This document shows, piece after piece, positions 13,367-63,300 of a DNA stretch of 64,000 nucleotides. A program made the position numbers and the translations under genes. This DNA comes from Leucoraja ocellata (Eukaryota): the NCBI GenBank assembly GCA_036785375.1, contig JAWMAR010000128.1:4774001-4838000 (forward strand), written 5' to 3'. Every line of letters begins with the position of its first letter. Position 1 is the first letter of the stretch. Under the pieces are notes generated by a model, which saw nothing but the letters and a program-made list of their open reading frames with translations, was not told the DNA's origin and searched no databases.

Positions 13367-14274
13367 TCATCTTACTAATGTAGTAATTCGATTCCAAAGA
13401 TACAGTGCAGCATTTTTAATTTCCTTCCTGAATTTACTCTGGGTGACTACATAAATGCAGGTGTTGGTGCAAGAGCTCAGAAGCTGAAGCATGTTTCCAC
13501 TTTCCTGGCGAATGAACCTTGGGTCGTTGAAATTAGAACCGCTGAAATAGGGTTCCTTTGAAATTTCCACGTAGAGGAAATCAACAACGTACGTCATCCA
13601 CAACAGGATGAAACTGCCCGAGATGAGAAAGAGCAAAACGATGGACTTTCTCCGACTGTCCATCTCTGCGTCGCTCTGCTTTTCTCCGTGACTCTGGGAC
13701 ACGAGTTTTTTGCGGCCTCTATTCGCCACGAGAATGTGTCTGACCGTCAGAATATTAAAGATTAAAATCAGGACGAACGGGAGTCCTGGGTTTAAAATGC
13801 GTGCGAACCAATCATACAGTGTCCAGGCGAGGGATATGCTGTAGATTGGTTTTCTGGTGCAAAACCACGGTTGGTTGTCAATGATGTAGAGTGGTTCGTA
13901 GATGAAGTACCAAGGGACGCTTTTCAAACAGCTCAACACACAGATTGTCCCAATGACCGCCGCCGCCGTTCTCTCTGTGCAATATGTACTCCTCAGCTTC
14001 TGGCAACAAATGGCCACGAACCGATCAAAGGTGAATGCGACCGTCAACCAGACCGAACTCTCGATGGCTGCATAAATTGCAACAGTGCTGAGAGTACAAG
14101 CTGGGGTTAAGGACATAAAACTAAATGGGAAATAAATGCCAACAATCCGGTTGAATATAACAGCAGTGATAACGACCAGTAGATCCGTCACCGCCATGGA
14201 CACCAGGTACCGACTGATGCACTTGGAGAGACCGCATCTTCCTCTGAACAGGATGATAATCGCCACCACATTCA
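13367..14274 (-). CDS. GPR139/GPR142-like class A GPCR, gene 1 (subfamily A), coding exon 2
   Basis: Acceptor catcag|TG. Open to stop with TM1-TM7, DLL (TM2), C3.25, TFDRFVAIC, FILLW, NML..NTCIY, SKFR helix 8. Gives 325 aa with exon 1. Confidence 0.93.
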
Positions 14275-14504
14275 CTGATGGAAAATAAATTTAAAATTAA
14301 TAGACGTGTTATCGTATTTATTTTAGTTTAGCCCAGTTGAGTTTAGTCTATTGTCACGTGCACCAAAGTACAGCGAACCCCTTTTTATTGCGTGTAACCA
14401 GTCCACTGAAAGACAATACAAGATTCGGCTCGAAAGACCGAATGGCCTCCTCTTGCACCTATTGTCTATTGTCATGATGAAAATCGAGCCATCCACAGTG
14501 GTTC

Positions 14505-14882
14505 GAAACTTATAGAAACTTACAAAATTATTAAGGGGATGGACAGACTAGATGCAGGAAGATTATTCCCGATGTTGGGGAAGTCTAGAACAAGGGGTCA
14601 CAGTTTAATGATAAGGGGGAAATCTTTTAGGACCGAGATGAGAAAATCATTTTTTTACACAGAGTGGTGAATCTGTGGAATTCTCTGGCCCAGTAGGTAG
14701 TTGAGGCCAGTTCATTGGCTATATTTAAGAGGGTGTTAGATGTGGCCCTTGTGGCTAAAGGGATCAGGGGGTATGGAGAGAAGGCATGGACAGGATACTG
14801 AGTTAGATGATCAGCCATGATCATATTGAATGGCGGTGCTGGCTCGAAGGGCCGAATGGCCTACTCCTGCGCCTATTTTCTA
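14505..14882 (+). mobile_element. CR1 LINE 3' fragment (intronic)
   Basis: High identity to the 3' end of the full-length CR1. Confidence 0.85.
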
Positions 14883-15975
14883 CCGCGAAAATCCATTGAA
14901 TGTTAGTCGGTATCTATTAGCGAACAATTTTCCCTTTGAGGGGACAATGCAATGAAAATCTAGGTCTCTTCCACTATGGCTGTCAATCTGTACTGCGGCC
15001 TTTCCAGTAACGGTACAAGCACAATGTACCAGTTTCCCTTTACCTTGAAGTGTATTGAGCCTTAACGCATAAGGTATAGCAAGGTAGTGGTGCCACAAAT
15101 ACGATACTGATAAGATATTGAACCGCAAGGTACAAAGTCGCCCCAAACTAACCATCAAGTTGCAGAACACAATTAATATTTATCTGTATGCACGCTCAAA
15201 CAATAAACACAATATCGGCGTTAACTTGGATGTGTTAACGATCAGAGAACAGCCTTTACAGTAAATATCCGTAAAGTAAAACGATCAAGAATGTTCTCCA
15301 AGACCCATGAGAAATTGTAGCACCTTCTGAAAACAAATAAGAAGCTCTTGCCCAAGGCCGACTAAAATGAAGACGTTATGCGTGGTTGGTGAGCTCCCTA
15401 GTCTCGTCCGGTAAAGTAAAAATAATATGTGGCAAAGAGAAGTCCGAAAGTAAGGATGACCTCGCACACCATACAGCCACCACTGTTGTCCGATAGGGAT
15501 CTCCTTGTCTGTTGAATCGCTCTGCGACTTTGGACCATTTACATCGTCCACGTAGATCGGGTAAATTGTGACTTGGAGTGATGGCATACAATCTATGATT
15601 ACGAATTTGCAGTTGAATTTGCATCTTCCCAATTAGCAATCCTTGTGAAATGAATAGAAATACATTTCGGGAAAAGGCATCTCAGGTTGCAAGATCGACA
15701 TTAATCATTTTGTTTCATCACTGAGGGTCAGGATTTGTGCAAGCTGGCGTAGTTGATTTCAGCAAGTCCGACAGGAGACCTCTCATCAAAGCCTCACATT
15801 TTATAAGTAGTTACCAAAAGTTTCGTTTCGTGACAAATTCTGAAAATGAACCATTGCAGCTTGCTTACCGAGGTAGAAACACACAGAGAGATATGTGCCA
15901 CGTTGTTAATTGTCAGAAAAACAGCAATTGATTAAACATCGATATATCACTCGCTGATTTAGTACAACGGCTTAC

Positions 15976-16045
15976 CCGGAACGCCGATGGCTGCAAGAAG
16001 TGGGTAATAAATAGCATAAACTGGACCCGTTATTCTGTCGTGCAT
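15976..16045 (-). CDS. GPR139-like gene 1, coding exon 1
   Basis: 70 nt, MHDRITGPVYAIYYPLLAAIGVP + G|gtaagc. The phase-1 donor matches the exon 2 acceptor phase. Confidence 0.9.
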
Positions 16046-16129: not shown

Positions 16130-16150
16130 AATCCACAGAGATTCAATTAG
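16130..16150 (-). promoter_or_regulatory. Conserved proximal promoter motif of subfamily A receptors
   Basis: CTAATTGAATCTCTGTGGATT starting 105 nt upstream of the ATG. Same motif at 30986 and 39101. Confidence 0.6.
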
Positions 16151-19129: not shown

Positions 19130-19329
19130 NNNNNNNNNNNNNNNNNNNNNNNNNNNNNNNNNNNNNNNNNNNNNNNNNNNNNNNNNNNNNNNNNNNNNNN
19201 NNNNNNNNNNNNNNNNNNNNNNNNNNNNNNNNNNNNNNNNNNNNNNNNNNNNNNNNNNNNNNNNNNNNNNNNNNNNNNNNNNNNNNNNNNNNNNNNNNNN
19301 NNNNNNNNNNNNNNNNNNNNNNNNNNNNN

Positions 19330-19876
19330 GTATTTTGTACACGAGCCGATCTATGTAATTGACGGCATTCCGTGGTATTGCAGACTGCGGGAGATCCGCC
19401 ACACTTCGCCTGCATGGATAACATTTGTCTGGTTTGACAGAATTGCGACCCCATGTGTCCCGTTTCTCCTGATTTTGCTGCTCAACGCACTGACGGTCAG
19501 ACAAATTCTGGTGGCCAGCAGAGCCCGTAAAAGACTCCGGGCCGAGAGCAACGTCGAGAATCAGAACGACGCGGAGATGGAGAGCCGAAGGAAATCCATC
19601 ATTTTACTCTTTGCCATCTCCTGGAGTTTCATCCTCATGTGGATGGCGTATGTTGTGCAGTTCCTGTATGTCCGCATCGCAAGCAACTACAAGATACAAA
19701 ATAACGACCCCATATTTATTCTCCGGGAAGCCGGAAACATGCTTCAACTTCTGAGTTCTTGCACCAACACGTTCATCTACACAGCGATCCAGAGCAAATT
19801 TAGAGCAGAGTTCAATAAGTTGGCCAGATATCCGTTCACAATGTTCAGCAAATTAATTTCAAAATCAAGAAACTAA
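19330..19876 (+). CDS. GPR139-like GPCR, gene 2 (subfamily B), 3' part of exon 2 (5' part lies in the gap)
   Basis: Open from the gap edge: YFVHEPIYVIDGIPWYCRL..WFDRIATPCVPF..RRKSIILLF..NMLQLLSSCTNTFIY..SKFR to stop. Confidence 0.88.
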
Positions 19877-20402: not shown

Positions 20403-20915
20403 TAGAACATAGAAAATAGGTGCAGGAGTAGGCCATTCTGCCCTTCGAGCCTGCACCGCCATTCAATATGATCTTGGCTATTCATCCAACTCAGTATCCT
20501 GTACCTGCCTTCTCTCCATACCCCCTGATCCCTTTGGCCACAAGGGCCACATCTAACTCCGTCTTAAATATAGCCGATGAACTGGCCTCAACTACATTCT
20601 GTGGCAGAGAATTCAGAGATTCACCACTCTGTGTAAAAAATGTTTTTCCCAATCTCAGTCCTAAAATATTCCCCTTTATCCTCAAACTGTGACCTCTTGT
20701 TCTGGACTTCCCCCAACATCTGGAACATTCTTCTGCCTCTAGCCTGTCCAACCCCTTAAGAATTTTGTAAGTTTCTATAAGATCCCCCCTCAATCTTCTA
20801 AATTCCAGCAAGTACATGCCGAGTCTATCCAGCCGTTCTTCGTATGAAAGTCCTGACATCCAAGGAATCAGTCTGGTGAACCTTCTCTGTACTCCCTCTA
20901 TGGCAAGAATGTCCT
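20403..20915 (-). mobile_element. 5'-truncated CR1 LINE
   Basis: ORF 20491-21033 is ORF2 C-terminus, and the tail is present. Confidence 0.88.
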
Positions 20916-22276
20916 TCGACGATAGAGAGTTATTGTTGTGGCTAACTTGTCCATCCCTGTAGAATTTTAGCAACATTCCAATTTGTAGATGGTGTGAATT
21001 TAGCAATGCGTCGTCTGCTGCATTGTTGTACATTGAATGCTGAATAAAGAAGTTACCATCCGTTGCTTGGTGGCCAGATATTCTTCTCTTCTGAAGCTAT
21101 AGATTTAGTCTAAGTGAAGCAAGTTTTCGTGGTTTAGGATTCATGACCATTATCCCCAAGCATGGTATCAATAGCGGGGTAAGATGTGGGAATTTCTGGA
21201 AACTCTAAGAATATTGGCCCAGTTCCTAGTATGCTTAACCCAAGAGCCATACATACTGGGGACGTATGATGGCAAAGTGGTCAACATGAATAAGGTAACT
21301 TAAAGGTCATGCTAGAATAGTTGTAAATGAATGGGGATGTGTTTAGTTTGCAAGGTGTCGCTGATAGATGAAAGATAAATGTAGGACACTTGTAAAACAG
21401 GCTGAGGGCAATAGAATTGCTCATAAGATAAGGAGGCATTATATGACACTATTTACAAGTAGGGAGAAGGCTTTTACGGAAAGGGAAAGTCCCAGCTGCC
21501 AAATAATAGAGGCGCCTCCAACAGAGATAAAAAACAAGTATGAAAGACTGCAAAGAAAAGTGGATTATTAGTGAATTACAGTAAAACAAAACGAAACCAA
21601 CATGTACCTGCTGTGACGCGGGCACTACAAATTGTTGCAAGTGTTTTGAAGCAATTAAACACTTTGGGTCCTCTCAGAGTTCTTCCCAATATAGACTATC
21701 AAGGCCGGAATAAACATACCTGTTTAAGCCACTCACCACCACAATATATGGTATTTCTGTGTGTGCTGTCTCAATCCTTGACTTAATTAGGAGGGCGATT
21801 GAGCAGCACGGAATCGCCTGATTCAGACGACAAGGTAAACATGGAAACATAGGAGGTAGGGGGAGTAGCGGGGGGGGGGGGGGGGGGGCAGTACCGGTCG
21901 GCACCCGGTGGTATACTGGGACAGGATTGTTTCTCCAGTGCTTAGGGTGTGAAAAATTGTGCCCGAGGCCGCCGTTCGTTAGCAGCTGTACTTGGGATTG
22001 GGAACGAGTTCAAACTTAAAGAAGCGCAATAGTCTGGGAATTGTTTCTTGTGGGGGCCATGGAAGGATTCTAAAGCGAAAGGAGAATGGCGACGCAGCCG
22101 GCAGAGCCAGAGACTCGGGTTGGATCTTGACCTCGGGTGCTGCTTGTGTGGAGTTTCCATGATCACCCTGTGACCACGTGGTTTCCGCCAAGTGTTCCAG
22201 TTTCCTCCCACATCGTAAAGCCGAGCGGGGTTGTAGGATAAATGGCCTCTGCAAGTTGTCCCTAATGTGAAGGGAG

Positions 22277-26300: not shown

Positions 26301-26480
26301 GCTACCTATTTCTTCTACCCTCATTTTACACCCTTCGGTCTCTACGCTCACACATTTAAGAAACCCTTTCCCTTTAACTCCATCCTCCACTGTCCCATTC
26401 AACACCCCACCCCCCTTATTCAGTTTAAAGCCATTCGTGTAGCAGTGGCAAACCTGCCTGCCAGAATGCTGGTCCCACAC
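23389..26480 (-). pseudogene. CR1 ORF2: APE endonuclease plus reverse transcriptase, two lesions near the C-terminus
   Basis: NARS, ITETW, GGGV, YRPP, MGDFN, SDH (endonuclease). KSPGPD, NYRPVSL, LDFQKAFD, GVPQGS, FADD (RT). Premature TAG at 23883-23885 and a 1-nt deletion near 23673. Confidence 0.9.
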
Positions 26481-31099: not shown

Positions 31100-31169
31100 A
31101 TGCACGGCCGAATAAGTGGCCCAGTTTATGCCGTTTACTACCCAATGCTTGCAGCACTTGGAGTTCCAG
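31100..31169 (+). CDS. GPR139-like gene 3 (subfamily A), coding exon 1
   Basis: 70 nt, MHGRISGPVYAVYYPMLAALGVP + G|gtgagt. Confidence 0.9.
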
Positions 31170-32020: not shown

Positions 32021-32452
32021 AGGATGATTCCATGTGTGCTCTCATACATATTAGAGGCGAATCGAAATATCTATTGACAACTTTTTTTTCATGCTATCCA
32101 AGTTTGCACATTTATATCTCACTTGTCCGTAACTAATCAATGGCAACATTGCACGGGGAGAACGGCGATGGTGAATTTAAGCACCATGTGTATCCTCAGT
32201 TGTTCAAAAAAAAATCCCGCTTTACTTCACGTGGGAGTCTCTGAACTCCATTAATAACGTCGCCTGGCAAATGGAAATAAGTATGAGGTGTTGCACTTTG
32301 AGAAGTCAAATGTAGCAGGAAAATGAATAAATAATTGCGTGAGCTTTAACAGGAATGTACAGATGAATTTTGGGGCGCAAGTTAATAGTCCCCGAAAATA
32401 TCAACACAAGTCGATAGAGAGGCTTGTTTTCATAGATCGGTGCATTGAGAAT

Positions 32453-33406: not shown

Positions 33407-34314
33407 TTAATTTCATGGCGATAGTGATCCTGTCTCGAGGAAAGTGCGGTCTCTCCAGATGCATCACGCGGTACCTGGTGTCCATGGCGGTGACGGATCT
33501 ACTGGTCGTGATCACAGCTGTCATCTTCAATCGCATTATTGGCATTTACTTTCCAATCAGTTTTATGTCCTTGACTCCCGCTTGCACTCTCAGCACTGTG
33601 ATCATTTATGCGGCCACCGAGAGTTCCGTCTGGTTAACGGTCGCTTTCACCTTTGACCGATTTGTAGCCATTTGTTGGCAGAAGTTGAAAACGAAATATT
33701 GCACCGCGAAAACAGCGGCGGTGGTCATAGCGACAATTTGTGTGTTAAGCTGTTTCAAGAGCGTTCCCTGGTATTTCATCTACGAACCCCTCTACACAAT
33801 TAACAACGTGCATTGGTTTTGTAACATAGTATCAAGCTATTACACATCAGTCCCATGGTCAATATTTGACTGGTTTGCACGGATTTTAAACCCAGGTCTC
33901 CCTTTCATTTTAATTTTACTCTTCAATGCATTGACGGTCAGACATATTCTAATGTCCAGCCGGGCACGTAGGAGACTCCGGGGTCAGGGCACTGGAGAAA
34001 ATCATAACGACCCTGAGATGGAGAGTCGGCGGAAGTCCATCATTTTACTCTTCGCCATCTCGGGCAGTTTCATCCTTCTATGGATGACGTACGTTGTCGA
34101 TTTTCTCTATGTGGAAATCTCAAACGAATCCTATTTCAGTGGTTCCAATTTCAACGACCCGAGGTTCATTCGCCAAGAAAGTGGAAACATGCTTCAGCTT
34201 TTGAGCTGCTGCACCAACACGTGTATTTATGTGGTGACCCAGAGTAAATTCAGGGAAGAGATAAGGAATGCTGCTCTGTTTCTTCGTGATCGTGTTGCTT
34301 CGTTAGTAAGATAG
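33407..34314 (+). CDS. GPR139-like GPCR, gene 3, coding exon 2
   Basis: Acceptor ctttttcacag|TT. Intact 7TM frame with TFDRF and NTCIY. Gives 325 aa with exon 1. Confidence 0.93.
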
Positions 34315-39204: not shown

Positions 39205-39274
39205 ATGCACGGCCGAATAAGTGGTCCAGTTTATGCCATTTACTACCCAATTCTAGCAGCCATTGGAGTTCCGG
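39205..39274 (+). CDS. GPR139-like gene 4 (subfamily A), coding exon 1
   Basis: 70 nt, MHGRISGPVYAIYYPILAAIGVP + G|gtgagt. Confidence 0.9.
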
Positions 39275-42196: not shown

Positions 42197-43104
42197 TAAA
42201 TTTGGTGGCGATTGTGATCCTGTCTCGAGGAAAGTGCGGTCTCTCCAGATGCATCACGCGGTACCTGGTGGCCATGGCGGTGGCGGATCTACTGGTCGTG
42301 ATCACAGCTGTCATCTTCAATCGCATTATTGGCATTTACTTTTCAATTAGTTTTATGTCCTTGACTCCCGCTTGCACTCTCAGCACTGTGATCATTTATG
42401 CGGCCACCGAGAGTTCGGTCTGGTTAACGGTCGCTTTCACCTTTGACCGATTTGTAGCCATTTGTTGCCAAGAACTAAAAATAAAATATTCTACCGAAAG
42501 AACGGCGACTGTGGTCATTGGGACAATCTGTGTGTTGAGCTGTTTGAAGAGCGTCCCTTGGTACTTTATATACGAACCCCTCTACACAGTTAATGATGTG
42601 CCGTGGTTTTGCAACATAATATCAAGCTACTACACATCGGTGGCATGGACAATATTTGATTGGTTTGCACGAATTTTAAACCCAGGACTCCCGTTCCTAT
42701 TTATTTTCCTGCTCAATGGTCTGACTGTCAAACACATTCTAGTGGCCAACAAAGCTCGCGGGAGACTCCGGGCGAAGACCGGTGGAAAGAACCGTAGCGA
42801 CCCAGAGACTGAGAACCGAAGGAAGTCTATTATTTTGCTCTTTGCCATTTCCGGTAGTTTCATCCTTTTATGGATGACATACGTGGTCAATTTCCTTTAT
42901 GTGCAAATTTCAAATGAACCCTATTTCGGGGGTTCCAACTACAATGACCCAAGGTTCATTCGCCAAGAAAGTGGAAACATGCTCCAGTTGCTCAGCTGCT
43001 GCACCAACACCTGCATCTATGCAGCCACGCAAAGTAAATTCAGAGCGGAATTGAAGAATGCGGCAACCTATATTTGTAACCAAATGGCAGCATTGGTGAG
43101 GTAA
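42197..43104 (+). CDS. GPR139-like GPCR, gene 4, coding exon 2
   Basis: Acceptor ctttttcacag|TA. Intact 7TM frame, 325 aa with exon 1. Confidence 0.93.
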
Positions 43105-49484: not shown

Positions 49485-50753
49485 TTATTGTCCTGATACT
49501 AAGTTTTCACTCTCCTTGTACACCGTCCTGTCATTCTCGTGATATGGCCCAACACAATGTGTCGTCTGCAATTTTATACGTGGAGCTGGAGGGGAATTTG
49601 ACCGTAGAGTAGTGAGTATATAGGGAGCGTAACAGGGGACGGAGAATGCATCCCTGCGAGGCATCGGCGTGGAGGAGATTTGACATCTACCCTCACTGAT
49701 GTGATCAGTGAGTCAGAAGATCGAAAATCCAATGGCAGGTGGGACTGTTGACCTTCGATCCACGTGTTTGGAGATCAGTTTGGATTGGAGTATTATGTTG
49801 AAGGGGGAGCTATGGACGATAAATAGGCATCTCTCGGAGCCCTTGTCGTCTAGATGTTCTAGAATTGAGCTTAGGGTCAGGTAGATGGCGTCTGCTGTGG
49901 ATCTGTGCACATGACCGCGTGGCTTCGTTCGTCGTGGATATTATGAGCCGAATGGACTGTTCCTGTGCTATGTTCTATGTTCCATATTATATATACGATA
50001 TACATATAGACAAGGGGCAGAATTTGGGCAGTGGGCAGGTGCTATAGACCTGCACGGGAAGGTAGTCGCTCCAGCCCCCATAGGTCTCGGGCAGATGGGG
50101 CTCGTCAGTCTGGGAAGGCAGTCCATCTAGGAGAGGGAAAACTCTGATTTAAAACCTCTACGACCTTGTGGCCATATCCAGTCATGGAAAACGCTCCTGG
50201 AGTAAACCTCAAGAAAATCAGGAGTCGGAGCCCCCAAGGCAGTTCGTCGTTGTCTACAACCTCGCCCTGGCAGCTCCTGCTGCAGCGCTGGTGCCAAACT
50301 GTAACGGCCCTGCTGTTCCTTTGGATCGATCGGCGACGTGGAGAGGGGGGACGTGCCACATGGGCAACAGCCTGTCCTCCATATGACATCGCCCAGCCTT
50401 GCATCCGACCACACATCACCTGCAAACTAGGATGCATCGCCCATGGCCAGTCATGACCGAAGGGGGCCTACTACTAAGGGACATTCTCCTTATCTGAAGA
50501 TGTGTTACTCAAATGTGTCTCCCGTTCTAAAGAACCAGAGCGAGAAATAACGTAATTGCTGAAACTAATGTGATAAATCCATGTGATCAAATTAACGGTG
50601 ACGTAAAATAATTAGCATATTGACGCGTGGAACTGATCTTAATTGTAACGTTATCTCATTTTCTCTCTAGGGTTAATATCAAATATAACATGGATTCATA
50701 TAAAAGTCAATTAGAACATCGGGAATGAATGCTAGTCACGACGTCTCTGAAGC

Positions 50754-50823
50754 ATGCATGTCCCTCCCACAGGTCTGGCATATGCCATCTACTACACCTC
50801 ACTTGCGGTTCTCGCTGTTCCAG
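50754..50823 (+). CDS. GPR139-like gene 5 (subfamily B), coding exon 1
   Basis: 70 nt, MHVPPTGLAYAIYYTSLAVLAVP + G|gtaaaa. TATAAAA at 50699. The intron spans a gap, so pairing with exon 2 is assumed. Confidence 0.85.
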
Positions 50824-52340: not shown

Positions 52341-53548
52341 TGTTCGGAAGATTCGGAAGATTACCGACTATTGCAAGACCAGTATCGTTCAGAAAGAGAA
52401 GATGGTATTTCCCTTTAATGACCGATGCACAGAATGAACGAGCGAAGAGGTCGTTGTAGAAGTGTATAACACGGCAGTTGGAATTCGGGGTCTATTTTTA
52501 AGGGTTACGGGGTGGGTGCATGGGCATGTATCTTTCAAAGCGATAGAGTATTTCGAGAAAGCCGTAATAAAGCACACAGTATACTGTGTAAAGCGCACAG
52601 GGTGAATAAGGATAATGGCGGGCATGAACAAGGAAATCACTACGCATTCCGCAGCCACTTGAGTATTGTGGCCGAATGTTAAAGATATGAAGGTCCGCGG
52701 TTAGACAAATAAGACATTGATGAACCGATTCGAGGAGTGGGGGACTTCAACTGTGTGGCTTTACCGAATGCTCCGTCTCTATGATTTCAAATATGTTACA
52801 TTCTGTAGTCGAATTTGCATCGCAGAAATCTCACACAATTCTTGGGTGGGTATATTAGTTTTAAGAATGGAAGGAAGGAAAAAAGAAAGGAAGAAAGAAA
52901 GACAGAAAGGATAGATGGATAGATGGATAGATGCATAGATGGATAGGGATNNNNNNNNNNNNNNNNNNNNNNNNNNNNNNNNNNNNNNNNNNNNNNNNNN
53001 NNNNNNNNNNNNNNNNNNNNNNNNNNNNNNNNNNNNNNNNNNNNNNNNNNNNNNNNNNNNNNNNNNNNNNNNNNNNNNNNNNNNNNNNNNNNNNNNNNNN
53101 NNNNNNNNNNNNNNNNNNNNNNNNNNNNNNNNNNNNNNNNNNNNNNNNNNNNNNNNNNNNNNNNNNNNNNNNNNNNNNNNNNNNNNNNNNNNNNNNNNNN
53201 NNNNNNNNNNNNNNNNNNNNNNNNNNNNNNNNNNNNNNNNNNNNNNNNNNNNNNNNNNNNNNNNNNNNNNNNNNNNNNNNNNNNNNNNNNNNNNNNNNNN
53301 NNNNNNNNNNNNNNNNNNNNNNNNNNNNNNNNNNNNNNNNNNNNNNNNNNNNNNNNNNNNNNNNNNNNNNNNNNNNNNNNNNNNNNNNNNNNNNNNNNNN
53401 NNNNNNNNNNNNNNNNNNNNNNNATTAATTTATAACATTCAACATTAATATTATATAGCAGAAGGGCTTCACAATGTTATAATAGGATTGGCCAATGCAC
53501 CACCTCTGTTGGACCTCTCTTTGAAACTTCGCATTTTCTCTCTTTCAG

Positions 53549-54468
53549 TTAATTTGCTGGCGATTGTAATCCTGGCCCGAGGGAAGTGTGGTCTCTCCAG
53601 ATGCATCACTCGGTACCTGGTGTCCATGGCGGCGACCGATCTCCTTGTCATTATCACCGCAGTGATATTAAACCGGATCAGTGGCATTTATTTCCCAGGC
53701 AGTTTACTGAACGTCACGCCAGTGTGTAGTCTCAGCGCTGCGGTCACTTTCGCAGCTAGAGTTTGCTCCGTGTGGTTAACCGTCTCGTTTACCTTTGATC
53801 GGTTTTTAGCCATTTGCTGCCAGAAGCTGAAGGCAAAATATTGCACTGAGCGAACGGCGACTGTAGTGATAACAACGATTTGTGTGTTGAGTTGTGTAAC
53901 CAATATCCATTGGTACTTTATACACGAGCCATTATATGTGGCTGACAACATCCCGTGGTTTTGCAAACTGAAAACAATTCGTAATACCTCACTGGTGTGG
54001 ATTGCGATTATTTGGCTCGATCGCGTTCTGACACCGTGCCTCCCCTTCTTCCTGATTTTGCTGTTTAACGCGCTCACCATGCGGCATATTCTAGCGGCCA
54101 GCAGAGCTCGCAGGAGACTGAGGGCCCTGAGCAATGGAGCGACTCAGAACGACCCAGAGATAGAGAATCGAAGAAAGTCCATCGTCTTACTCTTTGCCAT
54201 CTCGGGAAGCTTCATCCTGTTGTGGATGACGTATGTCGCACGCTTTCTGTATTTGCATATCACCAACGATTCCAATTTCACCAACTCCAATGACCCCAGG
54301 TACATACTGCAGGAAGTTGCAAACATGCTTCAGCTTCTGAGTTCTTGCACGAATACCTTTATTTATGCGGCAATTCAACGAAAATTCAGGGAAGAATTAA
54401 GGAAAATGGTCACATATCCGCTCAATGGAATAGTAAAAACATTACAATTGCGGCAAATAGAAACATAG
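53549..54468 (+). CDS. GPR139-like GPCR, gene 5, coding exon 2
   Basis: Acceptor ttttctctctttcag|TT. Intact 7TM frame, 329 aa with exon 1. Confidence 0.93.
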
Positions 54469-54611
54469 AAACATAGAAAATAGGTGCAGGAGTAGGCCAT
54501 TCGGCCCTTCGAGCCTGCACCGCCATTCAATATGATCATGGCTGATCATCCAACTCAGTATCCTGTACCTGCCTTTTCTCCATATCCCCTGATCCCTTTA
54601 GCCACAAGGCC
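54457..54611 (-). mobile_element. CR1 3' tail overlapping the stop codon of gene 5
   Basis: ATAGAAACATAGAAACATAGAAAATAGGTGCAGG.. starts inside the coding frame. Confidence 0.85.
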
Positions 54612-54669
54612 CATAAGATCCCACAGCTGTATCTCAGCCCTCTCCTCCTACTGTAAGGCCGGCCCTCTG

Positions 54670-54940
54670 ATGCGACTAGTAGAGCCGCCACCTCACAGCG
54701 CCCGAGACCCGGGTTCGATCCTGACATCGGGTGCTTTCGGTGTAGAGTTTGCACGTTCTACTTGACACCGCATGGGTTCCACACGCCCATCGCAAAGGCG
54801 TGCAGTTTTATAGGTAACTTGGCCTCTGTATATTCTACCTAGTGTGTAGGTAGTGGATGAGAAATTAGAATAATATGGAAGTGGTATGAACGGGTCGGCG
54901 TGCAGTCGGTGAGTCGAGCGCAGGCCTGTTTGTGTGGAGT
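54670..54940 (+). mobile_element. tRNA-derived SINE (HE1-like)
   Basis: CCTCACAGCGCC..GACCCGGGTTCGATCCT (B box), then GAGTTTGCACGTTCT core. Reverse-oriented relatives at about 28950-29110 and 37500-37680, forward relative at about 22090-22275. Confidence 0.65.
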
Positions 54941-55438
54941 AACTCTAATAGTAAAACCCAAGGAGATCATCCATTTGTCTCAAAGACTTTTTCTCCGCCG
55001 GATATATCTGTTAGGGGTTCCGAAATATCCCCCTTCTCCAATTTATATCATTCAACGGCTCCGACACGAGTGTTAGCAAATCCCGCGACCTTAACAATTT
55101 GGCACTGTGCTATTTGAATCGCTTGTTGCACAACGACACAGCTTTGCTTAGAAATACGGGGATGGGAAAGTATGGGTAGTAAGGTTAATTTATCTACCAA
55201 TTCCACTGGCTTGCGCTGTTAATTAATGTCCAAGACACTCTACTATCATCTACCCCGTTCATTCTTTTGCTGGCTTCTAGCCATTCAGTCGGACATCAGC
55301 CAAGCCGAGTTTGAAACCAGTAACACTCTCTCAAGACTTCGGTAATAATTACATTAAAAATTAAGCTGTGTCTATCAAACATCAACGACAGTAAATGTAA
55401 ATCAATGTGTGAATGTGATGCTTCAGGGTCCGTCGCTA

Positions 55439-56020
55439 ACATCGAAACATGGAAATTAGGTGCAGGAGTAGGCCATTTGGCCCTTCGAGCCTGCAACGCC
55501 ATTCAATATGATCATGGCTGATCATTCAACTCAGTATCCTGTACCTGCCTTCTCTCCATACCCCCTGATACTTTAGCCACAAGGGCCACATCTAACTCCC
55601 TCTTAAATATAGCCTATGAGACTGGCCTCAACAACATTCTGTGGCAGAGAATTCCAGAGATTCACCACTCTCCGTGTGAAAAATGTTTTTTCTCATCTCG
55701 GTCCTAAAAGGTTTCCCCCTTATCCTTAAAATGTGACCCCTTATTCTGGACTTCCCTAACATCGGGAACAATCTTCCTGCATCGAGCCTGTCCAGCCCCT
55801 TAAGAATGCTTCAAGTTTCTATAAGATTCCCCCCTCAATCCTCTAAATTCTAGCGAGTACAAGGCGAGTCTATCCAGTCGTTTTTTCATATGAACTTCCT
55901 GACATCCCAGGAATCAGTCTGGTGAACCTTTTCTGTACTGCCTCTATGGCAAGAATGTCTTTCCTCGGATTAGGAGACCAAAACTGTACGCAATACTCCA
56001 GTTGTGGTCACCCTGTACAA
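55439..56020 (-). mobile_element. 5'-truncated CR1 LINE
   Basis: ORF2 C-terminal remnants plus tail. Confidence 0.85.
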
Positions 56021-56277
56021 CTGACAACATAAGCGGAAATGTAATATAATTCATTTTTCTGCCTCCAACAAACGGCAATTGCAATCTGTTTGACCAATTA
56101 AGATGACGTGTACGAATGATGATGCAATCGAGTTTGTTTTTGAGTTCAGGCATTGGGTTGTGATGGCAATTAACAATGGTTTCATCACCCTCTCATTGTC
56201 TCCCGGGCCCAAACACGAGGTATATTAAAGCATTCGTCCAAAGTCAAACGGTAAAAACTCATCACTGATTGGCGACA

Positions 56278-56347
56278 ATGCATGTCCCGCCGACAGGGTT
56301 GCCCTACGCTATTTACTACACAATCCTCGCAGCTATCGCCGTTCCAG
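56278..56347 (+). CDS. GPR139-like gene 6 (subfamily B), coding exon 1
   Basis: 70 nt, MHVPPTGLPYAIYYTILAAIAVP + G|gtaaaa. Confidence 0.9.
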
Positions 56348-56644
56348 GTAAAACAATCAGTCTTCTTCTTCTTCTTCTTCTTCATGCGTATGGCGTGCAC
56401 AGCCTAAAGTTGTAGATCATTGAAAGACATAAGGCCAGGACACGGTCAGAAAACAACGAGTTATCCATCATTTGCGAGTCGCTGTCCACTGTAAGCGGCG
56501 ACAGTTGGATGTCTGTCTCCCGTAAATCTTAATCAGAACCGTCTGCATCGGTTCAGGCGCCTCGGTCCAGCAAAGATGTTTTCCAGCAGCGCAGTGCAAG
56601 TGCTTCGGACCAGCCATATGCCGGAAACAGGATGTGTAACTCGT

Positions 56645-57152
56645 GATTGAAGCAGTGCAGCGTAGGTTCACGAGATTGATCCCTGGGATGGCGGGACTGT
56701 CACATGAGGAAAGATTGAAAAGACCAGGCTTGTATTCACCGGAGTTTAGAAGGGTGAGAGGATATCTTATAGAAACATATAACATTATAAAAGGACTGGA
56801 CAAGCTAGATGCAGGAAAAAATGTTCCCAATATTGGGCGAATCCAGAACCAGGGGCCACAGTCTTAGAATTATGTAGAGGTCATTTAAGACTGAGGTGAG
56901 AAAAAACGTTTCCACCCAGAGAGTTGTGAATTTATGGAATTCCCTGCCACAGAGGGCAGCGGAGGCCAAGTCACTGGATGGATTTAAGAGAGTGTTAGAT
57001 AGAGCTCTAGGGACTAGTGGAGTCAAGGGATATGGGGAGAAGGCAGGCACGGGTTATTGATAGGGGACGATCATCCATGATCACAATGAATGGCGGTGCT
57101 GGCTCGAAGGGCCGAATGGCCTCTTCCTGCACCTAGTTTCTATGTTTCTATG
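56645..57152 (+). mobile_element. CR1 LINE 3' fragment (intronic)
   Basis: [15 protein letters not shown] remnant through to the tail. Confidence 0.85.
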
Positions 57153-58610
57153 TCATATGCCGTTCAACACACTTAAATGAATTAAAGAATTGGATGCCCC
57201 GAATAAGGAAAAGGTACTTCTAAAGGTAGCTAGTCTATAACAGTGGATTCTAACTTGAAAACATAGCAAGAAATGGGGCAGTTGAATGGGATCAAGGTCG
57301 AAATGCCAGCAGTTGTTGCCATCACGAAAAACGTTCCGATGTAGGTGGACTGTCGGCTTGGATCTTTTCTATTTGATTGGGATTAGGCACATACGATATC
57401 AATCATTTGTTAGGGCCCATTGTATAAATTCATTTGTATAAATTGTGATCATACGATATAAATCATTTGTTAGGGCCCGTTGTCGGTATTGTGTGCAACT
57501 CTGGTCAACATCCTAACGAAGGGCGTGATTGCTTCGACGATGTTGCAAAGAGGTTCACGGATTTGATGGCATTGGCTACAAAGTGAGTTTGGACTAAGTT
57601 GAATTGTTTTCTCTGGAGCGTAGGAGGGTGAGGGAATACCAGATAGACGATAGAGGGTAGGTACAGTAGATCAGCCGAGTGTATGTAGAAACAAACAACT
57701 ACAGATGATGGTTTATACCAAAGATAGACAGTGGCGCTGGAGTACCTCAGAAGGTCATGCAGCATCTCTGGAGAAAAAGGTTGGGCGGCGTTTCGGTTCG
57801 GGACTTTTCTTCAGATTGAAGCGATTTACTACATTCAACCAAAACAAGGAAACGTTTGAAGCATTTTGCAAATTCCATTCACGATAAATTGGGTTTTTTT
57901 TTAACCGAGGATACGTGCACCCGATGTCAATCACTCGATTTACCCGTTCCCCATCCTTCCATGTATCGAAACTATAAACTCCAGGAAACGCAAATCTCTT
58001 TCCATCTCTCGCATTTTTCACACACCCCTCGTCTATATCCACCTATCATTTGCCAGGCTTTGCCCCGCCTATTCCACCTATTTTTTCCAGCATTCTACTC
58101 ATCTCCCCTACTTGAAGCAATCTAACGAAGGGTCCCGATCTGAAACCTCGCCTGTCCGTTCCCTCCGTAGGAGCTGCCTGGCCCGCTGAGTTGCTCCACC
58201 ATTTTTTGTTTTGCCCAAGATTCCTGCATGTCATAGAGTCAAAGAGACAAACAGCGTGGAAACACCCCCCCCCCCCCCCCCCCCCCCCCCGGAACAATTT
58301 GCCCAGGCCGACCTTACCGAGGAGTACAAGTACCAAACCTGGACTTTCCACTGGTAACTTTAATTTCATGTTTCTTATATCTTGTGTGTTATGACTGTTG
58401 GCAGATCAATTTCCCTCCTGTGATAAAGTTCGATCGTATCGTACACTAGATTGTCGAGACACTGTGTTCTTTTTTCCAATGGAAGGGTCTCGACCCGAAT
58501 CGTCATCCATTCTTTTGTCTCGAGAGATGCTGCCTGTCCCGCTCCAACATTTAGTGTCGACCACATCTATGCAACCCGTAACCTATCGTCTTTCTCTTCT
58601 CTCCCTGCAG

Positions 58611-59509
58611 TGAATCTGGTGGCGATTGTGATTCTGGCTCGGGGAGAGTGCGGACTCTCCAGATGTATCACTCGGTACCTGGTCTCCATGGCTGTGACGG
58701 ATCTCCTGGTCATTATCACGGCCGTGATATTAAACCGGCTCAGCGGCATTTATTTCCCGGGCAGTTTACTAAACATCACCCCCGTGTGTAGTCTCAGCGC
58801 CGCTGTAACTTTCGCAGCTCGAGTTTGCTCGGTTTGGTTAACCGTCTCGTTCACCTTTGATCGATTTGTAGCCATTTGCTACCAGAAACTGAAGACTAAA
58901 TATTGCACCGAGCGAACGGCGACCGTGGTTATAATAACGGTTTGTCTGTTAAGTTGTTTGACCAACATCCCTTGGTACTTCATACATGGACCGCTCTACA
59001 TATCTGGCGATGTCTCGTGGTATTGCAGATTGAAGAAAATCCTTTACACTTCGCCCATCTGGAGAGCGTTCGACGCACTCGATCGCATTTTAACCCCGTG
59101 CCTCCCGTTCCTCCTGATCTTGCTGCTCAACGCGCTCACGGTCAGACACATCCTGGCGGCGAGCCGAGCCCGCGAGAGGCTCCGCGCCGTCAGCAAGGCG
59201 GAGACTCAGAGCGACCCGGAGATGGAGAGTCGGAGGAAGTCCATCGTTTTGCTCTTCAGCATTTCCGGGACCTTCATCCTCCTGTGGATGACGTACGTCG
59301 TTCGCTTCTTGTACGTCCGCATCACCAATGACGCCAGCTTCAAAAGTTTCACCGACCCCAAGTTCCTTCTGCAAGAGGCCGCCAACATGCTCCAGCTTCT
59401 GAGTTCCTGCACCAACACGTTCATTTATGCCGCGGTTCAGAGCAAATTTAGAGATGAGCTGAAGAAAGCAGCCAAATATCCATTCACTCTAATTGCTAAA
59501 ATAATCTAG
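58611..59509 (+). CDS. GPR139-like GPCR, gene 6, coding exon 2
   Basis: Acceptor ctttctcttctctccctgcag|TG. Intact 7TM frame, 322 aa with exon 1. AATAAA at 59661. Confidence 0.93.
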
Positions 59510-60989: not shown

Positions 60990-61344
60990 NNNNNNNNNNN
61001 NNNNNNNNNNNNNNNNNNNNNNNNNNNNNNNNNNNNNNNNNNNNNNNNNNNNNNNNNNNNNNNNNNNNNNNNNNNNNNNNNNNNNNNNNNNNNNNNNNNN
61101 NNNNNNNNNNNNNNNNNNNNNNNNNNNNNNNNNNNNNNNNNNNNNNNNNNNNNNNNNNNNNNNNNNNNNNNNNNNNNNNNNNNNNNNNNAGAGGGAGGAG
61201 GGGGGTGGCCCTCTTTCTGAAATCAACAACCAGCTCCTTAGTTTTTGAGATGTTAAGTATGAGGTTGTTGTTCTCACACCACCTTACTAGCTCCTCTACT
61301 TCACTACGGTAAACGGTTTCGATGTTATTGGTAATAAGACCTGT

Positions 61345-61912
61345 AGGGATGTAATGTTAAAATTGTACAAGGCATTGGTGAGACCAAATCTGGAGTATGG
61401 TGTACAATTTTGGTCGCCCAATTTTAGGAAGGATGTCAACAAAATAGAGAGAGTACAGAGGAGATTTACTAGAATGTTGCCTGGGTTTCAACAACTAAGT
61501 TACAAAGAAAGGTTGAATAAGTTAGGTCTTTATTCTCTGGAGCGTCTTTAAAATGATGAGAGGGATAGACAGAGTTGATGTGGATCAGCTTTTCCCTTTG
61601 AGAATAGGGAAGATTCAAACAAGAGGACACGACTTCAGAATTAAGGGACAGATGTTTAGGGGTAACATGACGGGGAACTTCTTTACTCAGAGAGTGGTTG
61701 CGGTGTGGAATGAGCTTCCAGTGGAAGTGGTGGAGGCAGGTTCGTAGGTATCATTTAAAAATAAATTGGATAGGCATATGGAGGTGAAGGGAATGGGGGG
61801 TTATGGTATGAGTGCAGGCAGGTGGGACTAAGGGAAAAATGTTGTTCGGCACTACTTGTAGGGCCGAGATGGCCTGTTTCCGTGCTGTAATTGTTATATG
61901 GTTATATGGTTA
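61345..61912 (+). mobile_element. CR1-family LINE 3' fragment (GGTTATAT tail)
   Basis: LYKALVRPNLEYGVQFWSP, TRGH, FFTQRVV. Confidence 0.85.
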
Positions 61913-62387
61913 TACCTACATTTTGAGTGGTTTAAATGATCCGTGGTTTTAAATATGATTCAGTTAGCCGAGTTTAGTCACTACTCCAAGGACGGGAGTA
62001 TGTAAGTTCCTATCCCTTAAAATATTAATGCTTTATGTTTTGTTTGGTTGCAATGTTNNNNNNNNNNNNNNNNNNNNNNNNNNNNNNNNNNNNNNNNNNN
62101 NNNNNNNNNNNNNNNNNNNNNNNNNNNNNNNNNNNNNNNNNNNNNNNNNNNNNNNNNNNNNNNNNNNNNNNNNNNNNNNNNNNNNNNNNNNNNNNNNNNN
62201 NNNNNNNNNNNNNNNNNNNNNNNNNNNNNNNNNNNNNNNNNNNNNNNNNNNNNNNNNNNNNNNNNNNNNNNNNNNNNNNNNNNNNNNNNNNNNNNNNNNN
62301 NNNNNNNNNNNNNNNNNNNNNNNNNNNNNNNNNNNNNNNNNNNNNNNNNNNNNNNNNNNNNNNNNNNNNNNNNNNNNNNGTCTGCAG

Positions 62388-63300
62388 CGAATTTGGTGGC
62401 GATCGTGATCCTGCATCGAGGCAAATGCGGTCTCTCCAAGTGCATCACTCGCTACCTGCTGGCCATGTCGGCGACGGATCTACTGGTCATTATCACCGCT
62501 GTGATAATCAACAGGATCGGTGGGATTTATTTTCCGGGCAGTTTCCTGTCCATAACCCCAGTCTGTAGTCTCAGCCTCACATTGACATATGCAGCCAGGG
62601 TCAGTTCCGTCTGGTTAACGGTAACTTTCACCTTTGACCGGTTTGTAGCTATTTCCTGCCAGAAACTGAAAGCTTCGTATTGCACCGAGAAGGCGGCAGT
62701 TGCCGTCATAGGAACGGTGTGTGTGTTGGGGTGTGTGATAAGTATCCCGTGGTATTTTGTACTGGAACCAATGTATATCATCAACGACGTTCCATGGTAT
62801 TGTAAACTGAAGAAATCCGTTACACTTCGCCAGTGTGGACAGCACTGGACTGGTTTGACAGAATTGCAACCCCGTGTCTCCCGTTCGTCCTGATTTTGCT
62901 GCTGAACGCGCTGACGGTCAGACACATCCTGGCGGCCAGCAGAGCCCGCAGGAGGCTCTGGGCCCAGAGCAATGGACAGACTCAGAGCGACCCAGAGATG
63001 GAAAGTCGAAGGAAGTCCATCATTTTGCTCTTCACCATCTCCGGAAGTTTCATCCTCTTGTGGATGATGTATGTTGTACTTTTCCTGTACATCCGCATCA
63101 CGAACGACTACACCTTCCAAAGCTACAGTGACCCCAAGTTTATTCTCCAGGAAGCAGGAAACATGCTTCAACTTCTGAGTTCTTGCACCAACACGTTTAT
63201 TTATGCTGCGACTCAGGGGAAATTCAGAGACGAGTTAAAGAATATGGTTCAGTGTCCATTTAGTACGCTCGCCAAATTATATACTGCAAAAATAAATTGA
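62388..63300 (+). pseudogene. GPR139-like GPCR, gene 7 (subfamily B), exon 2 with a 1-nt frameshift (pseudogene or sequencing error)
   Basis: Acceptor tctgcag|CG. AAGAAATCCGT at about 62810-62820 lacks one base relative to gene 6 (AAGAAAATCCTT). Both halves are otherwise open. Exon 1 not seen and is probably in a gap. Confidence 0.8.

What the first reader, a model, noticed from the sequence alone, without database searches (positions are those of the whole stretch)
13367..63300. Tandem array of seven diversified GPR139/142-like receptors: candidate lineage-specific chemosensory or amino-acid receptor repertoire
Seen: seven paralogues in about 50 kb, five fully reconstructable (322-329 aa), in two subfamilies. 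They have almost no extracellular N-terminus and many synonymous differences between genes 5 and 6, suggesting purifying selection. Established: mammalian GPR139 and GPR142 are single-copy receptors activated by aromatic L-amino acids, and cartilaginous fishes have very few classical OR genes. Inference: clustered, compact, birth-and-death-evolving receptors with variable pockets are the signature of a sensory or immune-surveillance repertoire. This may be an uncharacterised receptor system built from the GPR139 lineage.
Basis: partly seen in the sequence, partly recalled or inferred. Interest (0 to 1): 0.88.

Follow-up and report, generated by a model that had tools for sequence, protein, structure and literature searches.

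The report
Skate array of GPR139-like orphan receptors
A 50-kb stretch of skate DNA holds seven copies of an orphan cell-surface receptor gene from a very large, apparently undescribed receptor family of sharks and rays; what the receptors detect, and in which cells, is still unknown.

Summary
The window (a skate, nearest Leucoraja erinacea) carries seven rhodopsin-type GPCR loci. Five are complete two-exon genes of 322-329 aa. One survives only as its C-terminal half behind an assembly gap. One lacks exon 1 and has a 1-nt frameshift. They fall into two subfamilies, have a 7-residue N-terminus, and show pairwise dN/dS of 0.11-0.26 with dS of 0.6-2.

The name is only partly right. Human GPR139 is the nearest solved receptor, but at about 26 % identity. 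The nearest outside kin is a conserved orphan receptor of amphibians and sturgeon.

The array is a small sample of a cartilaginous-fish family with more than 2,100 non-redundant public proteins. At least 78 come from one shark; only 5 chimaera rows appeared. RefSeq auto-names them 'probable GPR139'. Eight literature searches on the family or its setting found no description.

All five complete genes share a promoter cassette. Pocket-side residues differ between subfamilies but hardly within subfamily A.

Function is untested. One poly-A RNA run from a related species showed no reads on two genes. I favour a chemoreceptor-type repertoire (about 50 %) over immune or neuropeptide roles. Earlier notes of this scan report similar arrays, often interleaved with TCR V segments, elsewhere in this genome.

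The parts
13367..14274 (-). g1 exon 2 (subfamily A), through the stop codon
   Evidence: tblastn; open frame; acceptor; Pfam 7tm_1 82.9 bits
15976..16045 (-). g1 exon 1 (ATG plus 23 codons plus 1 nt), followed by donor GTAAG
16133..16150 (-). conserved promoter cassette CTAATTGAATCTCTGTGG, 105 nt upstream of the g1 ATG
19331..19876 (+). g2: the C-terminal 181 codons plus stop (subfamily B); the 5' part is lost in gap 19130-19329; no exon 1 found
   Evidence: 180 of 181 residues identical to Leucoraja erinacea P0057
30986..31003 (+). conserved promoter cassette of g3
31100..31169 (+). g3 exon 1
32144..32267 (+). degenerate receptor fragment (TM3/ICL2 region, two frames) inside the g3 intron
   Evidence: E 2.6e-6
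33407..34314 (+). g3 exon 2 (subfamily A)
   Evidence: 95 % identical to Rhinoraja P0095
39101..39118 (+). conserved promoter cassette of g4
39205..39274 (+). g4 exon 1
42197..43104 (+). g4 exon 2 (subfamily A); its intron holds a LINE 3' fragment (40040-40732)
50655..50672 (+). conserved promoter cassette of g5
50754..50823 (+). g5 exon 1 (separated from exon 2 by an intron that holds gap 52951-53423)
53549..54468 (+). g5 exon 2 (subfamily B)
   Evidence: DNA contig of run X6 with 1 difference in 683 nt
56192..56207 (+). conserved promoter cassette of g6 (shorter spacer)
56278..56347 (+). g6 exon 1
   Evidence: its 23 residues are identical to Amblyraja P0004
58611..59509 (+). g6 exon 2 (subfamily B)
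   Evidence: 293 of 298 residues identical to P0004; X6 contigs with 0-3 differences
62388..63300 (+). g7 exon 2 (subfamily B), with a 1-nt frame change in an A-run near 62812-62815; exon 1 not in readable sequence; gap 62058-62379 ends 8 nt before its acceptor

Best explanation
WHAT IS SHOWN. This is one tandem array of a very large receptor family of cartilaginous fish, expanded mainly in sharks and rays. The proteins are rhodopsin-type (class A) GPCRs. Each gene has two coding exons. Exon 1 (70 nt) encodes the start codon, a 7-residue outer N-terminus and most of TM1. A phase-1 intron of about 2-3 kb follows. Exon 2 encodes the rest. The genes multiply by local tandem duplication, stay under purifying selection, and occasionally decay: g7 has a frameshift and a fragment sits in the g3 intron. 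They share a short promoter cassette followed by a TATA-like box.

WHAT IS INFERRED. The family works as a ligand-diverse chemoreceptor-type repertoire. The conserved inner face and helix 8 would couple to one common G-protein pathway. The outer TM halves and ECL2/ECL3 would set ligand specificity, which differs between subfamilies. The shared promoter cassette would put the genes under one cell-type programme. The most likely site is sensory cells (olfactory, or other chemosensory or somatosensory cells). Neither ligand nor tissue is known.
For: - Seven loci and the two-exon model.
- Fold: 7tm_1 hits. AlphaFold model of orthologue P0004 has pLDDT 87.5 and pTM 0.85, with seven helices, an ECL2 hairpin and helix 8.
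- Conserved residues across 64 aligned sequences: R108 of D-R-F is invariant; C83/C162, W249 and N292..Y296 are nearly invariant.
- Selection: dN/dS 0.11-0.26 for all 21 pairs.
- Family size: 2437 proteins at E<=1e-10; 2134 at E<=1e-40 with a chimaera member as query; 112 clusters at 50 % identity with E<=1e-30.
- One shark: Heterodontus francisci accounts for 26 of 120 rows, and for 54 of 120 rows, of which 52 are new (my hand count of the listings).
- Lineage-specific clades: g1/g3/g4 plus Rhinoraja form a skate-only clade beside shark sequences; g5/g6 form a skate pair.
- Variability across 57 family rows: outer TM halves 1.48 bits against inner halves 0.87 bits, Mann-Whitney p 1e-9.
- Variability between the window's subfamilies: 37-39 of 99 outer against 21-23 of 110 inner TM residues differ.
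- Promoter: the cassette CTMATT-N1-3-TCTCNNKGG occurs exactly 5 times in 64 kb. Each copy lies 86-114 nt upstream of one of the five exon-1 ATGs. Shuffles gave a mean of 0.02.
- Background (established knowledge, recalled): large tandem class-A GPCR expansions in vertebrates, such as OR, TAAR, V1R/ORA and MRGPR, are expressed in sensory neurons.
Against: - No expression evidence. Poly-A RNA run X12 gave depth of 0.5 or less on every bin lying wholly in g5 or g6 coding exons. Runs X1 and X3 held only repeats.
- The catshark sensory-organ paper reports that its 50 most specific 'brain & olfactory epithelium' genes did not include GPCRs (passage seen).
- Within subfamily A the pocket-side residues are almost identical (8-11 of 99), and the whole-gene dN/dS is low. 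These near paralogues may therefore be redundant, not ligand-diversified.
- The promoter pattern was written after seeing the five sequences. Its count of 5 is partly circular.
- The Atlas look-alikes beyond the family itself are FMRFamide-type and other peptide receptors. That would fit endogenous ligands as well.
Confidence: 0.55

Rival explanations
1. The receptors are true derivatives of GPR139/GPR142. They keep that pharmacology and sense aromatic L-amino acids.
For: - GPR139 is the best solved match: 49 bits for a single sequence, and 125 bits against 98 for NTSR1 with a family profile.
- GPR139 is Foldseek rank 1.
- RefSeq names most members 'probable GPR139'.
Against: - Identity to human GPR139 is only about 26 %, counted by me from the alignment.
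- No true GPR139 appears among the best 150 of 1.8 billion representatives. The hits auto-named GPR139 that I checked score only 60-70 bits to the human protein.
- The nearest outside kin is an amphibian/sturgeon orphan receptor.
- The Foldseek E-value for GPR139 is no better than for CXCR2, NTSR1 or the mu-opioid receptor.
- The residue three positions after the TM6 Trp is Tyr here and Arg in GPR139 (alignment). That this Arg matters for agonists is recalled, not tested.
Confidence: 0.1
2. The receptors are leukocyte or lymphoid receptors of chemoattractant type. They were co-amplified with, and perhaps co-regulated with, the T-cell-receptor V segments among which the arrays lie.
For: - A V-set gene segment with an RSS-like signal lies 3.4 kb from g1.
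- Unchecked first-stage notes report GPR139-like arrays interleaved with TCR V segments on several other pieces of this genome.
- Some members are auto-named GPR15-like or CCR3-like.
- An EBF-like half-palindrome in the promoter cassette would also fit lymphoid EBF (inference).
Against: - In opossum, human and mouse, TRAV genes are interspersed with olfactory receptor loci at the 5' end of TRA/D (passage seen in PMC2275272). That those olfactory receptors have no immune role is my background knowledge, not stated in the passage; on that basis, interleaving predicts nothing about function.
- Chemokine receptors score clearly below GPR139 and NTSR1 with the family profile.
- No expression data exist.
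Confidence: 0.15
3. The receptors are an expansion of neuropeptide or hormone receptors for endogenous peptides, expressed in brain or endocrine tissue.
For: - The nearest non-family Atlas clusters are FMRFamide-receptor-like, GHSR-like and neuropeptide-receptor-like.
- After GPR139, the family profile matches the neurotensin, TRH, PrRP and NMU receptors.
- There is strong purifying selection, and orthologues are conserved between skate genera at 95-99 %.
Against: - Thousands of members with lineage-specific clades are not the pattern of vertebrate peptide receptors (background knowledge).
- A 7-residue N-terminus gives little surface for peptide capture (inference).
- No matching expansion of ligand genes is known to me.
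Confidence: 0.15
4. The array is decaying or artefactual: the copies are pseudogenes, or duplications created by the assembly.
For: - g7 has a frameshift, g2 and g7 are incomplete, and a fragment lies in the g3 intron.
- Four assembly gaps fall in the region.
- No RNA reads were found.
Against: - Five complete reading frames have canonical splice sites.
- dN/dS is 0.11-0.26 at dS 0.6-2.
- The copies differ by 19-43 % at the protein level, so they are not assembly duplicates.
- Contigs of DNA run X6 match the g5 and g6 exons with 0-3 differences. That run may be the source sample.
- Orthologues are annotated in three other skates.
Confidence: 0.03

Closest known systems
GPR139 / GPR142 (mammalian orphan class-A receptors; aromatic L-amino acids as agonists is recalled, not tested here)
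   Same: - It is the best solved-structure match by sequence and by profile.
- Both have a non-canonical TM7 motif in place of NPxxY: N-T-x-I-Y here and N-F-F-L-Y in GPR139 (alignment).
- Both have a D-R-aromatic motif followed by (I/V)A(I/V)C.
   Different: - Identity is about 26 %.
- This family has thousands of copies against single-copy genes.
- The N-terminus is 7 residues.
- The residue after the TM6 Trp-x-x is Tyr, not Arg.
- Nearer relatives exist outside mammals.
Amphibian/sturgeon orphan receptor auto-named 'probable GPR139' (e.g. Pleurodeles P0237, Xenopus tropicalis P0306, Acipenser P0322)
   Same: It is the sister group of the cartilaginous-fish family in the careful tree. The joint clade has support 100/96. 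Length is similar (339-356 aa).
   Different: - Each of the 20 amphibian rows comes from a different species, at 66-100 % identity. That is one row per species.
- It is only 32-33 % identical to the shark and skate members.
- No expansion is seen. Its function is also unknown.
Vertebrate chemosensory multigene GPCR families (OR, TAAR, ORA/V1R, MRGPR)
   Same: - Tandem arrays.
- Nearly the whole coding sequence in one exon.
- Lineage-specific clades.
- Occasional pseudogenes.
- A more variable outer face and a conserved inner face.
- A shared short promoter cassette with a TAAT-type core.
   Different: - It is not a member by sequence: Pfam 7tm_4 scores 18.6-21.9 bits against a cut-off of 27.
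- A coding intron lies inside TM1.
- Sensory expression has not been shown.
Olfactory receptor genes interspersed with TRAV segments at the 5' end of the mammalian TRA/TRD locus
   Same: A GPCR array and rearranging V segments lie side by side. Here it is one V-set segment with an RSS-like signal 3.4 kb from g1. For mammals, the passage seen is in PMC2275272.
   Different: The GPCR family is different. Whether the skate locus is TRA/TRD was not established here. The interleaving elsewhere in this genome rests on unchecked scan notes.

Membership tests
Class A (rhodopsin-type) GPCR, Pfam PF00001 7tm_1 | Profile match above the curated cut-off | tested here: met
   5 of 5 ORFs score 75.5-82.9 bits against a cut-off of 30.5
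Class A (rhodopsin-type) GPCR, Pfam PF00001 7tm_1 | Seven transmembrane helices plus helix 8 | tested here: met
   AlphaFold model of orthologue P0004: pLDDT 87.5, helices at 8-34, 41-71, 80-113, 124-147, 172-217, 226-262, 273-299 and 301-321
Class A (rhodopsin-type) GPCR, Pfam PF00001 7tm_1 | E/DRY-type motif at the end of TM3, and the TM3-ECL2 cysteine pair | tested here: met
   D107-R108-F109 with R108 invariant; C83 and C162 nearly invariant in 64 sequences
Class A (rhodopsin-type) GPCR, Pfam PF00001 7tm_1 | CWxP (TM6) and NPxxY (TM7) micro-switches | tested here: inconclusive
   W249, N292 and Y296 are nearly invariant, but both prolines are absent: L-W-M-T and N-T-F-I-Y. GPR139 also lacks the TM7 proline
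GPR139/GPR142 subfamily | Orthologue-level similarity to GPR139 or GPR142 | tested here: not met
   49.2 bits and about 26 % identity to human GPR139. Closer kin score 120 bits (P0234). That closer kin is itself only 70 bits from GPR139
GPR139/GPR142 subfamily | GPR139 is the nearest characterised receptor | tested here: met
   It is the best PDB hit for a single sequence and for the family profile: 125 bits against 98 for NTSR1
GPR139/GPR142 subfamily | Placement inside the GPR139+GPR142 clade in a tree with true orthologues | not tested
   No true GPR139 or GPR142 sequence was returned by any tool, and I did not type one from memory
GPR139/GPR142 subfamily | Activation by L-Trp or L-Phe | not testable with these tools
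   Needs heterologous expression
Vertebrate odorant receptors (Pfam PF13853 7tm_4) | Profile match above the curated cut-off | tested here: not met
   18.6 and 21.9 bits for g3 and g4 against a cut-off of 27; no hit for g1, g5 or g6
Chemosensory-type multigene receptor repertoire (a functional kind, not a sequence family) | Large copy number in tandem arrays with lineage-specific clades | tested here: met
   7 loci in 50 kb. 2134 proteins at E<=1e-40. Skate-only and batoid-only clades
Chemosensory-type multigene receptor repertoire (a functional kind, not a sequence family) | Ligand-side diversification with a conserved signalling side | tested here: inconclusive
   Met across the family (1.48 against 0.87 bits) and between subfamilies. 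Not met within subfamily A (8-11 of 99 outer against 22-29 of 110 inner differences)
Chemosensory-type multigene receptor repertoire (a functional kind, not a sequence family) | Expression in sensory cells, sparse and one receptor per cell | not testable with these tools
   The only RNA run laid (X12: tissue unknown, another species, about 6 % of the run read) gave no reads on the g5/g6 exons

The most novel reading that the evidence does not exclude
This family, and not the few OR, TAAR or ORA genes, is a major missing chemoreceptor repertoire of sharks and rays. It would comprise on the order of a hundred or more genes per species. The genes would be expressed one or few per cell in olfactory or other chemosensory cells, under a shared homeodomain-plus-EBF-like promoter cassette. 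It would have grown from a single ancestral gene that amphibians and sturgeon still keep. Its arrays would have grown together with T-cell-receptor V segments, echoing the OR/TRAV neighbourhood of mammals.
Probability: 0.3. Interest if true: 0.9.

Novelty: new member of a known kind. Interest (0 to 1): 0.62.

Why it matters
Cartilaginous fish are described as poor in GPCRs and in odorant receptors. [quoted passage not shown]

A class-A receptor family with more than 2,000 non-redundant public sequences, and at least 78 in one shark, runs against that picture. It has only automatic names. If it is sensory, it bears directly on how sharks and rays smell or taste. If it is immune, it is an unrecognised receptor system embedded in an antigen-receptor locus. 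Either way the family is directly testable now: public genomes already carry gene models, and the amphibian single-copy relative offers a tractable entry point.

This window itself adds the following:
- a clean two-exon gene model
- a shared promoter cassette
- evidence of old paralogues (dS 0.6-2) kept under constraint

Tried and rejected
NCBIfam. No hit; it is a prokaryote-centred library.

Genomic context in other species.

Expression. No listed holder was on record as RNA. Runs X1 and X3, guessed to be RNA, held only interspersed repeats. Poly-A run X12 showed reads only on repeats.

Foldseek against PDB. It did not discriminate: GPR139 ranked first, but its E-value matched that of CXCR2, NTSR1 and the mu-opioid receptor.

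Lhx2/Ebf composite motif. I looked for a textual consensus of the mouse composite motif to compare with the cassette. The homeodomain/EBF reading of the cassette therefore rests on recalled consensus sequences only.

Bacterial-type promoter scan. It was irrelevant to a eukaryotic gene and is discarded.

V segment against PDB. It did not separate TCR from Ig light-chain V domains.

'Seven intact genes'. Rejected: only five are complete.

'Recent amplification'. Rejected: dS is at least 0.63 for every pair.

Tree with true GPR139/GPR142. Not done, for lack of tool-given sequences.

Literature.
- Searches on the family and on its TCR-locus setting found no description of it.
- One further search concerned the mouse motif.
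Supplementary gene-family tables of the shark genome papers may list these genes.

Full report
WHAT IS IN THE WINDOW

The window has four runs of N: 19130-19329, 52951-53423, 60990-61189 and 62058-62379. Translated search with the gene-5 ORF found eight HSPs at seven loci and nowhere else at E<=1e-3. A looser search added one degenerate fragment of about 40 codons at 32144-32267. All five long ORFs tested match Pfam 7tm_1 at 75.5-82.9 bits against a cut-off of 30.5. The odorant-receptor model 7tm_4 stays below its cut-off, at 18.6 and 21.9 bits against 27.

GENE MODEL

None of the long ORFs has an in-frame ATG ahead of TM1. Public homologues are 320-329 aa long. They begin with a 23-residue stretch (MH....YAIYY..LA...VP) that the ORFs lack.

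Searching those N-termini against the window found that stretch five times: at 16045-15977(-), 31100-31168, 39205-39273, 50754-50822 and 56278-56346. Each copy lies 1.7-2.9 kb upstream of an exon 2 on the same strand. Each is followed by G|GTAAG or G|GTGAG. Each exon 2 is preceded by a pyrimidine-rich tract and AG. The intron is in phase 1 and splits the codon just before the TM1 asparagine.

From coordinates alone, the five complete genes encode 325, 325, 325, 329 and 322 residues. Searches used exon 2, and whole-protein steps used the public orthologue P0004.

GAPS AND BROKEN COPIES

- g2. The left flank of gap 19130-19329 is not receptor-coding. The right flank enters g2 exon 2 in frame at about codon 143, and the frame runs to a stop at 19874-19876. 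At least 426 nt of exon 2 are missing, more than the 200 N written. The gap size is therefore underestimated, or the copy is truncated.
- g5. Gap 52951-53423 lies inside its intron. No coding sequence is affected, but the two exons are paired by scaffold order only.
- g7. Its exon 2 starts 8 nt after gap 62058-62379. No exon 1 for g7 or g2 is in the readable sequence. g7 also changes frame at an A-run near 62812-62815. No reads were laid there, so mutation and assembly error cannot be separated.

In total there are five complete genes, two incomplete or broken loci, and one fragment.

SOURCE ORGANISM

- g6 exon 2 is identical to Amblyraja radiata P0004 at 293 of 298 residues. It has one mismatch to Leucoraja erinacea P0063.
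- g2 is identical to L. erinacea P0057 at 180 of 181 residues.
- g3 is 95 % identical to Rhinoraja longicauda P0095.

The window is therefore from a skate, nearest Leucoraja. Contigs of DNA run X6 match the g5 and g6 exons with 0-3 differences. That run may be the source sample.

PARALOGUE RELATIONS AND SELECTION

Subfamily A is g1, g3 and g4, at 74-81 % identity. Subfamily B is g5, g6, g7 and g2, at 63-76 %. Identity between A and B is 57-65 %. Nei-Gojobori estimates over all 21 pairs give dN/dS of 0.11-0.26 at dS 0.63-2.0. For g5/g6, dS is 1.09 and dN/dS is 0.12. The copies are old and constrained.

FAMILY SIZE AND RANGE

With g5 as query, 2437 proteins (90 % clusters) score E<=1e-10. Of the best 120, 118 carry a name and all 118 are sharks, rays or skates. 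Most are auto-named 'probable GPR139', and a few 'GPR15-like' or 'CCR3-like'.

An exhaustive search of 50 % representatives found 112 clusters at E<=1e-30. Identity then falls sharply from 40 % or more to 26-32 %. I looked up 18 family representatives:
- 16 are elasmobranch.
- 1 is unnamed.
- 1 is the chimaera Callorhinchus milii.

With that chimaera protein as query, 2134 proteins score E<=1e-40. The best 120 hold 5 Callorhinchus rows and 54 Heterodontus francisci rows, 52 of them absent, which had 26 (hand counts). That gives at least 78 distinct clusters in one shark.

The first-stage notes of this scan mention GPR139-like arrays in 24 notes on this genome. These notes are unchecked.

RELATION TO GPR139

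Human GPR139 is the best solved match: 49 bits against 34 for the next hit with a single sequence, and 125 bits against 98 for NTSR1 with a family profile. Identity is only about 26 %.

The nearest non-cartilaginous hits come from coelacanth, teleosts, bichir and amphioxus. They are also auto-named GPR139, yet the three that I checked against the solved human protein (coelacanth P0234, bichir P0268, anchovy P0253) score only 60-70 bits to it. They are not its orthologues.

A salamander hit led to a conserved receptor present in 20 amphibian rows from 20 species at 66-100 % identity. A sturgeon relative stands at 46 %, then elasmobranch members at 32-33 %. No amniote appeared.

In the careful tree (63 rows):
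- The amphibian+sturgeon clade (100/100) is sister to the 45 cartilaginous-fish rows. Their monophyly is weak, at 74/61.
- The joint clade is strong, at 100/96.
- It stands apart from the other 'GPR139-like' sequences.

PROTEIN FEATURES

The AlphaFold model of P0004 has pLDDT 87.5 and pTM 0.85. It shows seven helices, an ECL2 hairpin, helix 8 and a 7-residue N-terminus. In 64 aligned sequences, R108 of D-R-F is invariant. C83/C162, W249 and N292..Y296 are nearly invariant. A family signature, G-x-C-G-L-S-x-C, sits in ICL1.

Across 57 family rows, the outer TM halves are more variable than the inner halves (1.48 against 0.87 bits, p 1e-9). Inside the window the picture is mixed:
- Between subfamilies, 37-39 of 99 outer against 21-23 of 110 inner TM residues differ.
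- Within subfamily A, only 8-11 of 99 outer residues differ, and TM3 differs at 0-2 of 34. The differences lie in ECL2, the TM5 extension with ICL3, and the tail.
- dN/dS of the outer part is not raised (0.10-0.13).

'Variable pockets' is therefore true between subfamilies but not among the A copies.

PROMOTER

Aligning 400 nt upstream of the five start codons showed one conserved block. The subfamily-A form occurs 3 times in the window, with 0 expected. A looser pattern written from the five copies (CTMATT, 1-3 nt, TCTCNNKGG) occurs exactly 5 times in 64 kb. Each copy lies 86-114 nt upstream of an exon-1 ATG. Shuffles gave a mean of 0.02. The count is partly circular.

A TATA-like element follows 12-14 nt later. 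Reading the block as a homeodomain core plus an EBF-like half-palindrome rests on recalled consensus sequences. The paper on the mouse Lhx2/Ebf composite motif gave no textual consensus to compare. This lead came from an earlier scan note (s1-885575) that described it for subfamily A. I find it upstream of both subfamilies.

EXPRESSION

No run holding the stretch was on record as RNA. I laid four runs on 53520-59509. Poly-A run X12 (a related organism, about 6 % of the run read) gave depth of 0.5 or less in every bin wholly inside g5 or g6 coding exons. It gave high depth only on interspersed repeats. Runs X1 and X3 likewise held only repeats. This is weak negative evidence.

LITERATURE

Six searches on the family and two on its TCR-locus setting found no description of it. 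A further search concerned the mouse motif. Passages I saw state that:
- the catshark has 2 OR and 6 OR-like genes;
- that study treated only OR, TAAR, ORA and V2R (PMC11979771);
- cartilaginous fish have a relative paucity of GPCRs (PMC8455134).

VERDICT

This is a real, constrained, tandemly duplicating receptor repertoire restricted to cartilaginous fish. It is only a distant relative of GPR139. It is already present, with automatic names, in public annotations. Its function is untested.

I favour a chemoreceptor-type role (about 50 %). The grounds are family size, mode of evolution, gene architecture and the shared promoter. An immune role (15 %) and a neuropeptide-receptor role (15 %) come next.

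The neighbouring V segment does not decide between them. In mammals olfactory receptor genes are interspersed with TRAV genes too (PMC2275272).

Noticed in passing
window 9595-9985 (+): An immunoglobulin V-set gene segment (Pfam V-set 52.5 bits) ends in YYCAV. An RSS-like signal follows directly: CACAGTG at 9947-9953 and ACAAAAACT at 9975-9983. The spacer is 21 nt, or 23 nt if counted from the overlapping CACACAG at 9945-9951. The segment lies 3.4 kb from g1 and is convergent with it. The chain type (TCR or Ig light chain) was not resolved.
   Followed up: partly
window 16133-16150(-), 30986-31003, 39101-39118, 50655-50672, 56192-56207: A conserved 16-18-nt cassette (TAAT/TCAT core plus TCTCNNKGG) lies 86-114 nt upstream of each of the five exon-1 start codons and nowhere else in the window. 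A TATA-like box follows it. The cassette is present in both subfamilies despite dS above 1 between them.
   Followed up: partly
window 23883-26998 (-); also 789-1418, 20491-21033, 40040-40732, 10908-11261: A long LINE-type element has an 865-aa endonuclease/reverse-transcriptase ORF and an upstream ORF. Several 3' fragments of the same family are scattered between and inside the receptor genes; one lies in the g4 intron.
   Followed up: no
window 54320-54919, 55320-56119, 56520-57319, 57520-58719: Interspersed repeats between g5 and g6 and inside the g6 intron attract very deep coverage in all four runs, including both strands of poly-A RNA run X12. They are high-copy, transcribed repeats. They explain the small 'share of words' of the supposed RNA holders.
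   Followed up: partly
window 32144-32267 (+): A short degenerate receptor fragment (TM3/ICL2 region, split over two frames) sits inside the g3 intron. It is a remnant of a further copy.
   Followed up: partly
window 52900-52950: A GATA/GATG-type microsatellite runs directly into gap 52951-53423. It is a likely cause of the assembly break.
   Followed up: no
proteins P0237, P0303-P0322 (public, not in the window): An orphan receptor auto-named 'probable GPR139' is conserved at 66-74 % identity across salamanders, frogs and a caecilian, with a sturgeon relative. It appears as one row per species. It is the sister of the cartilaginous-fish family, and no amniote hit appeared.
   Followed up: partly
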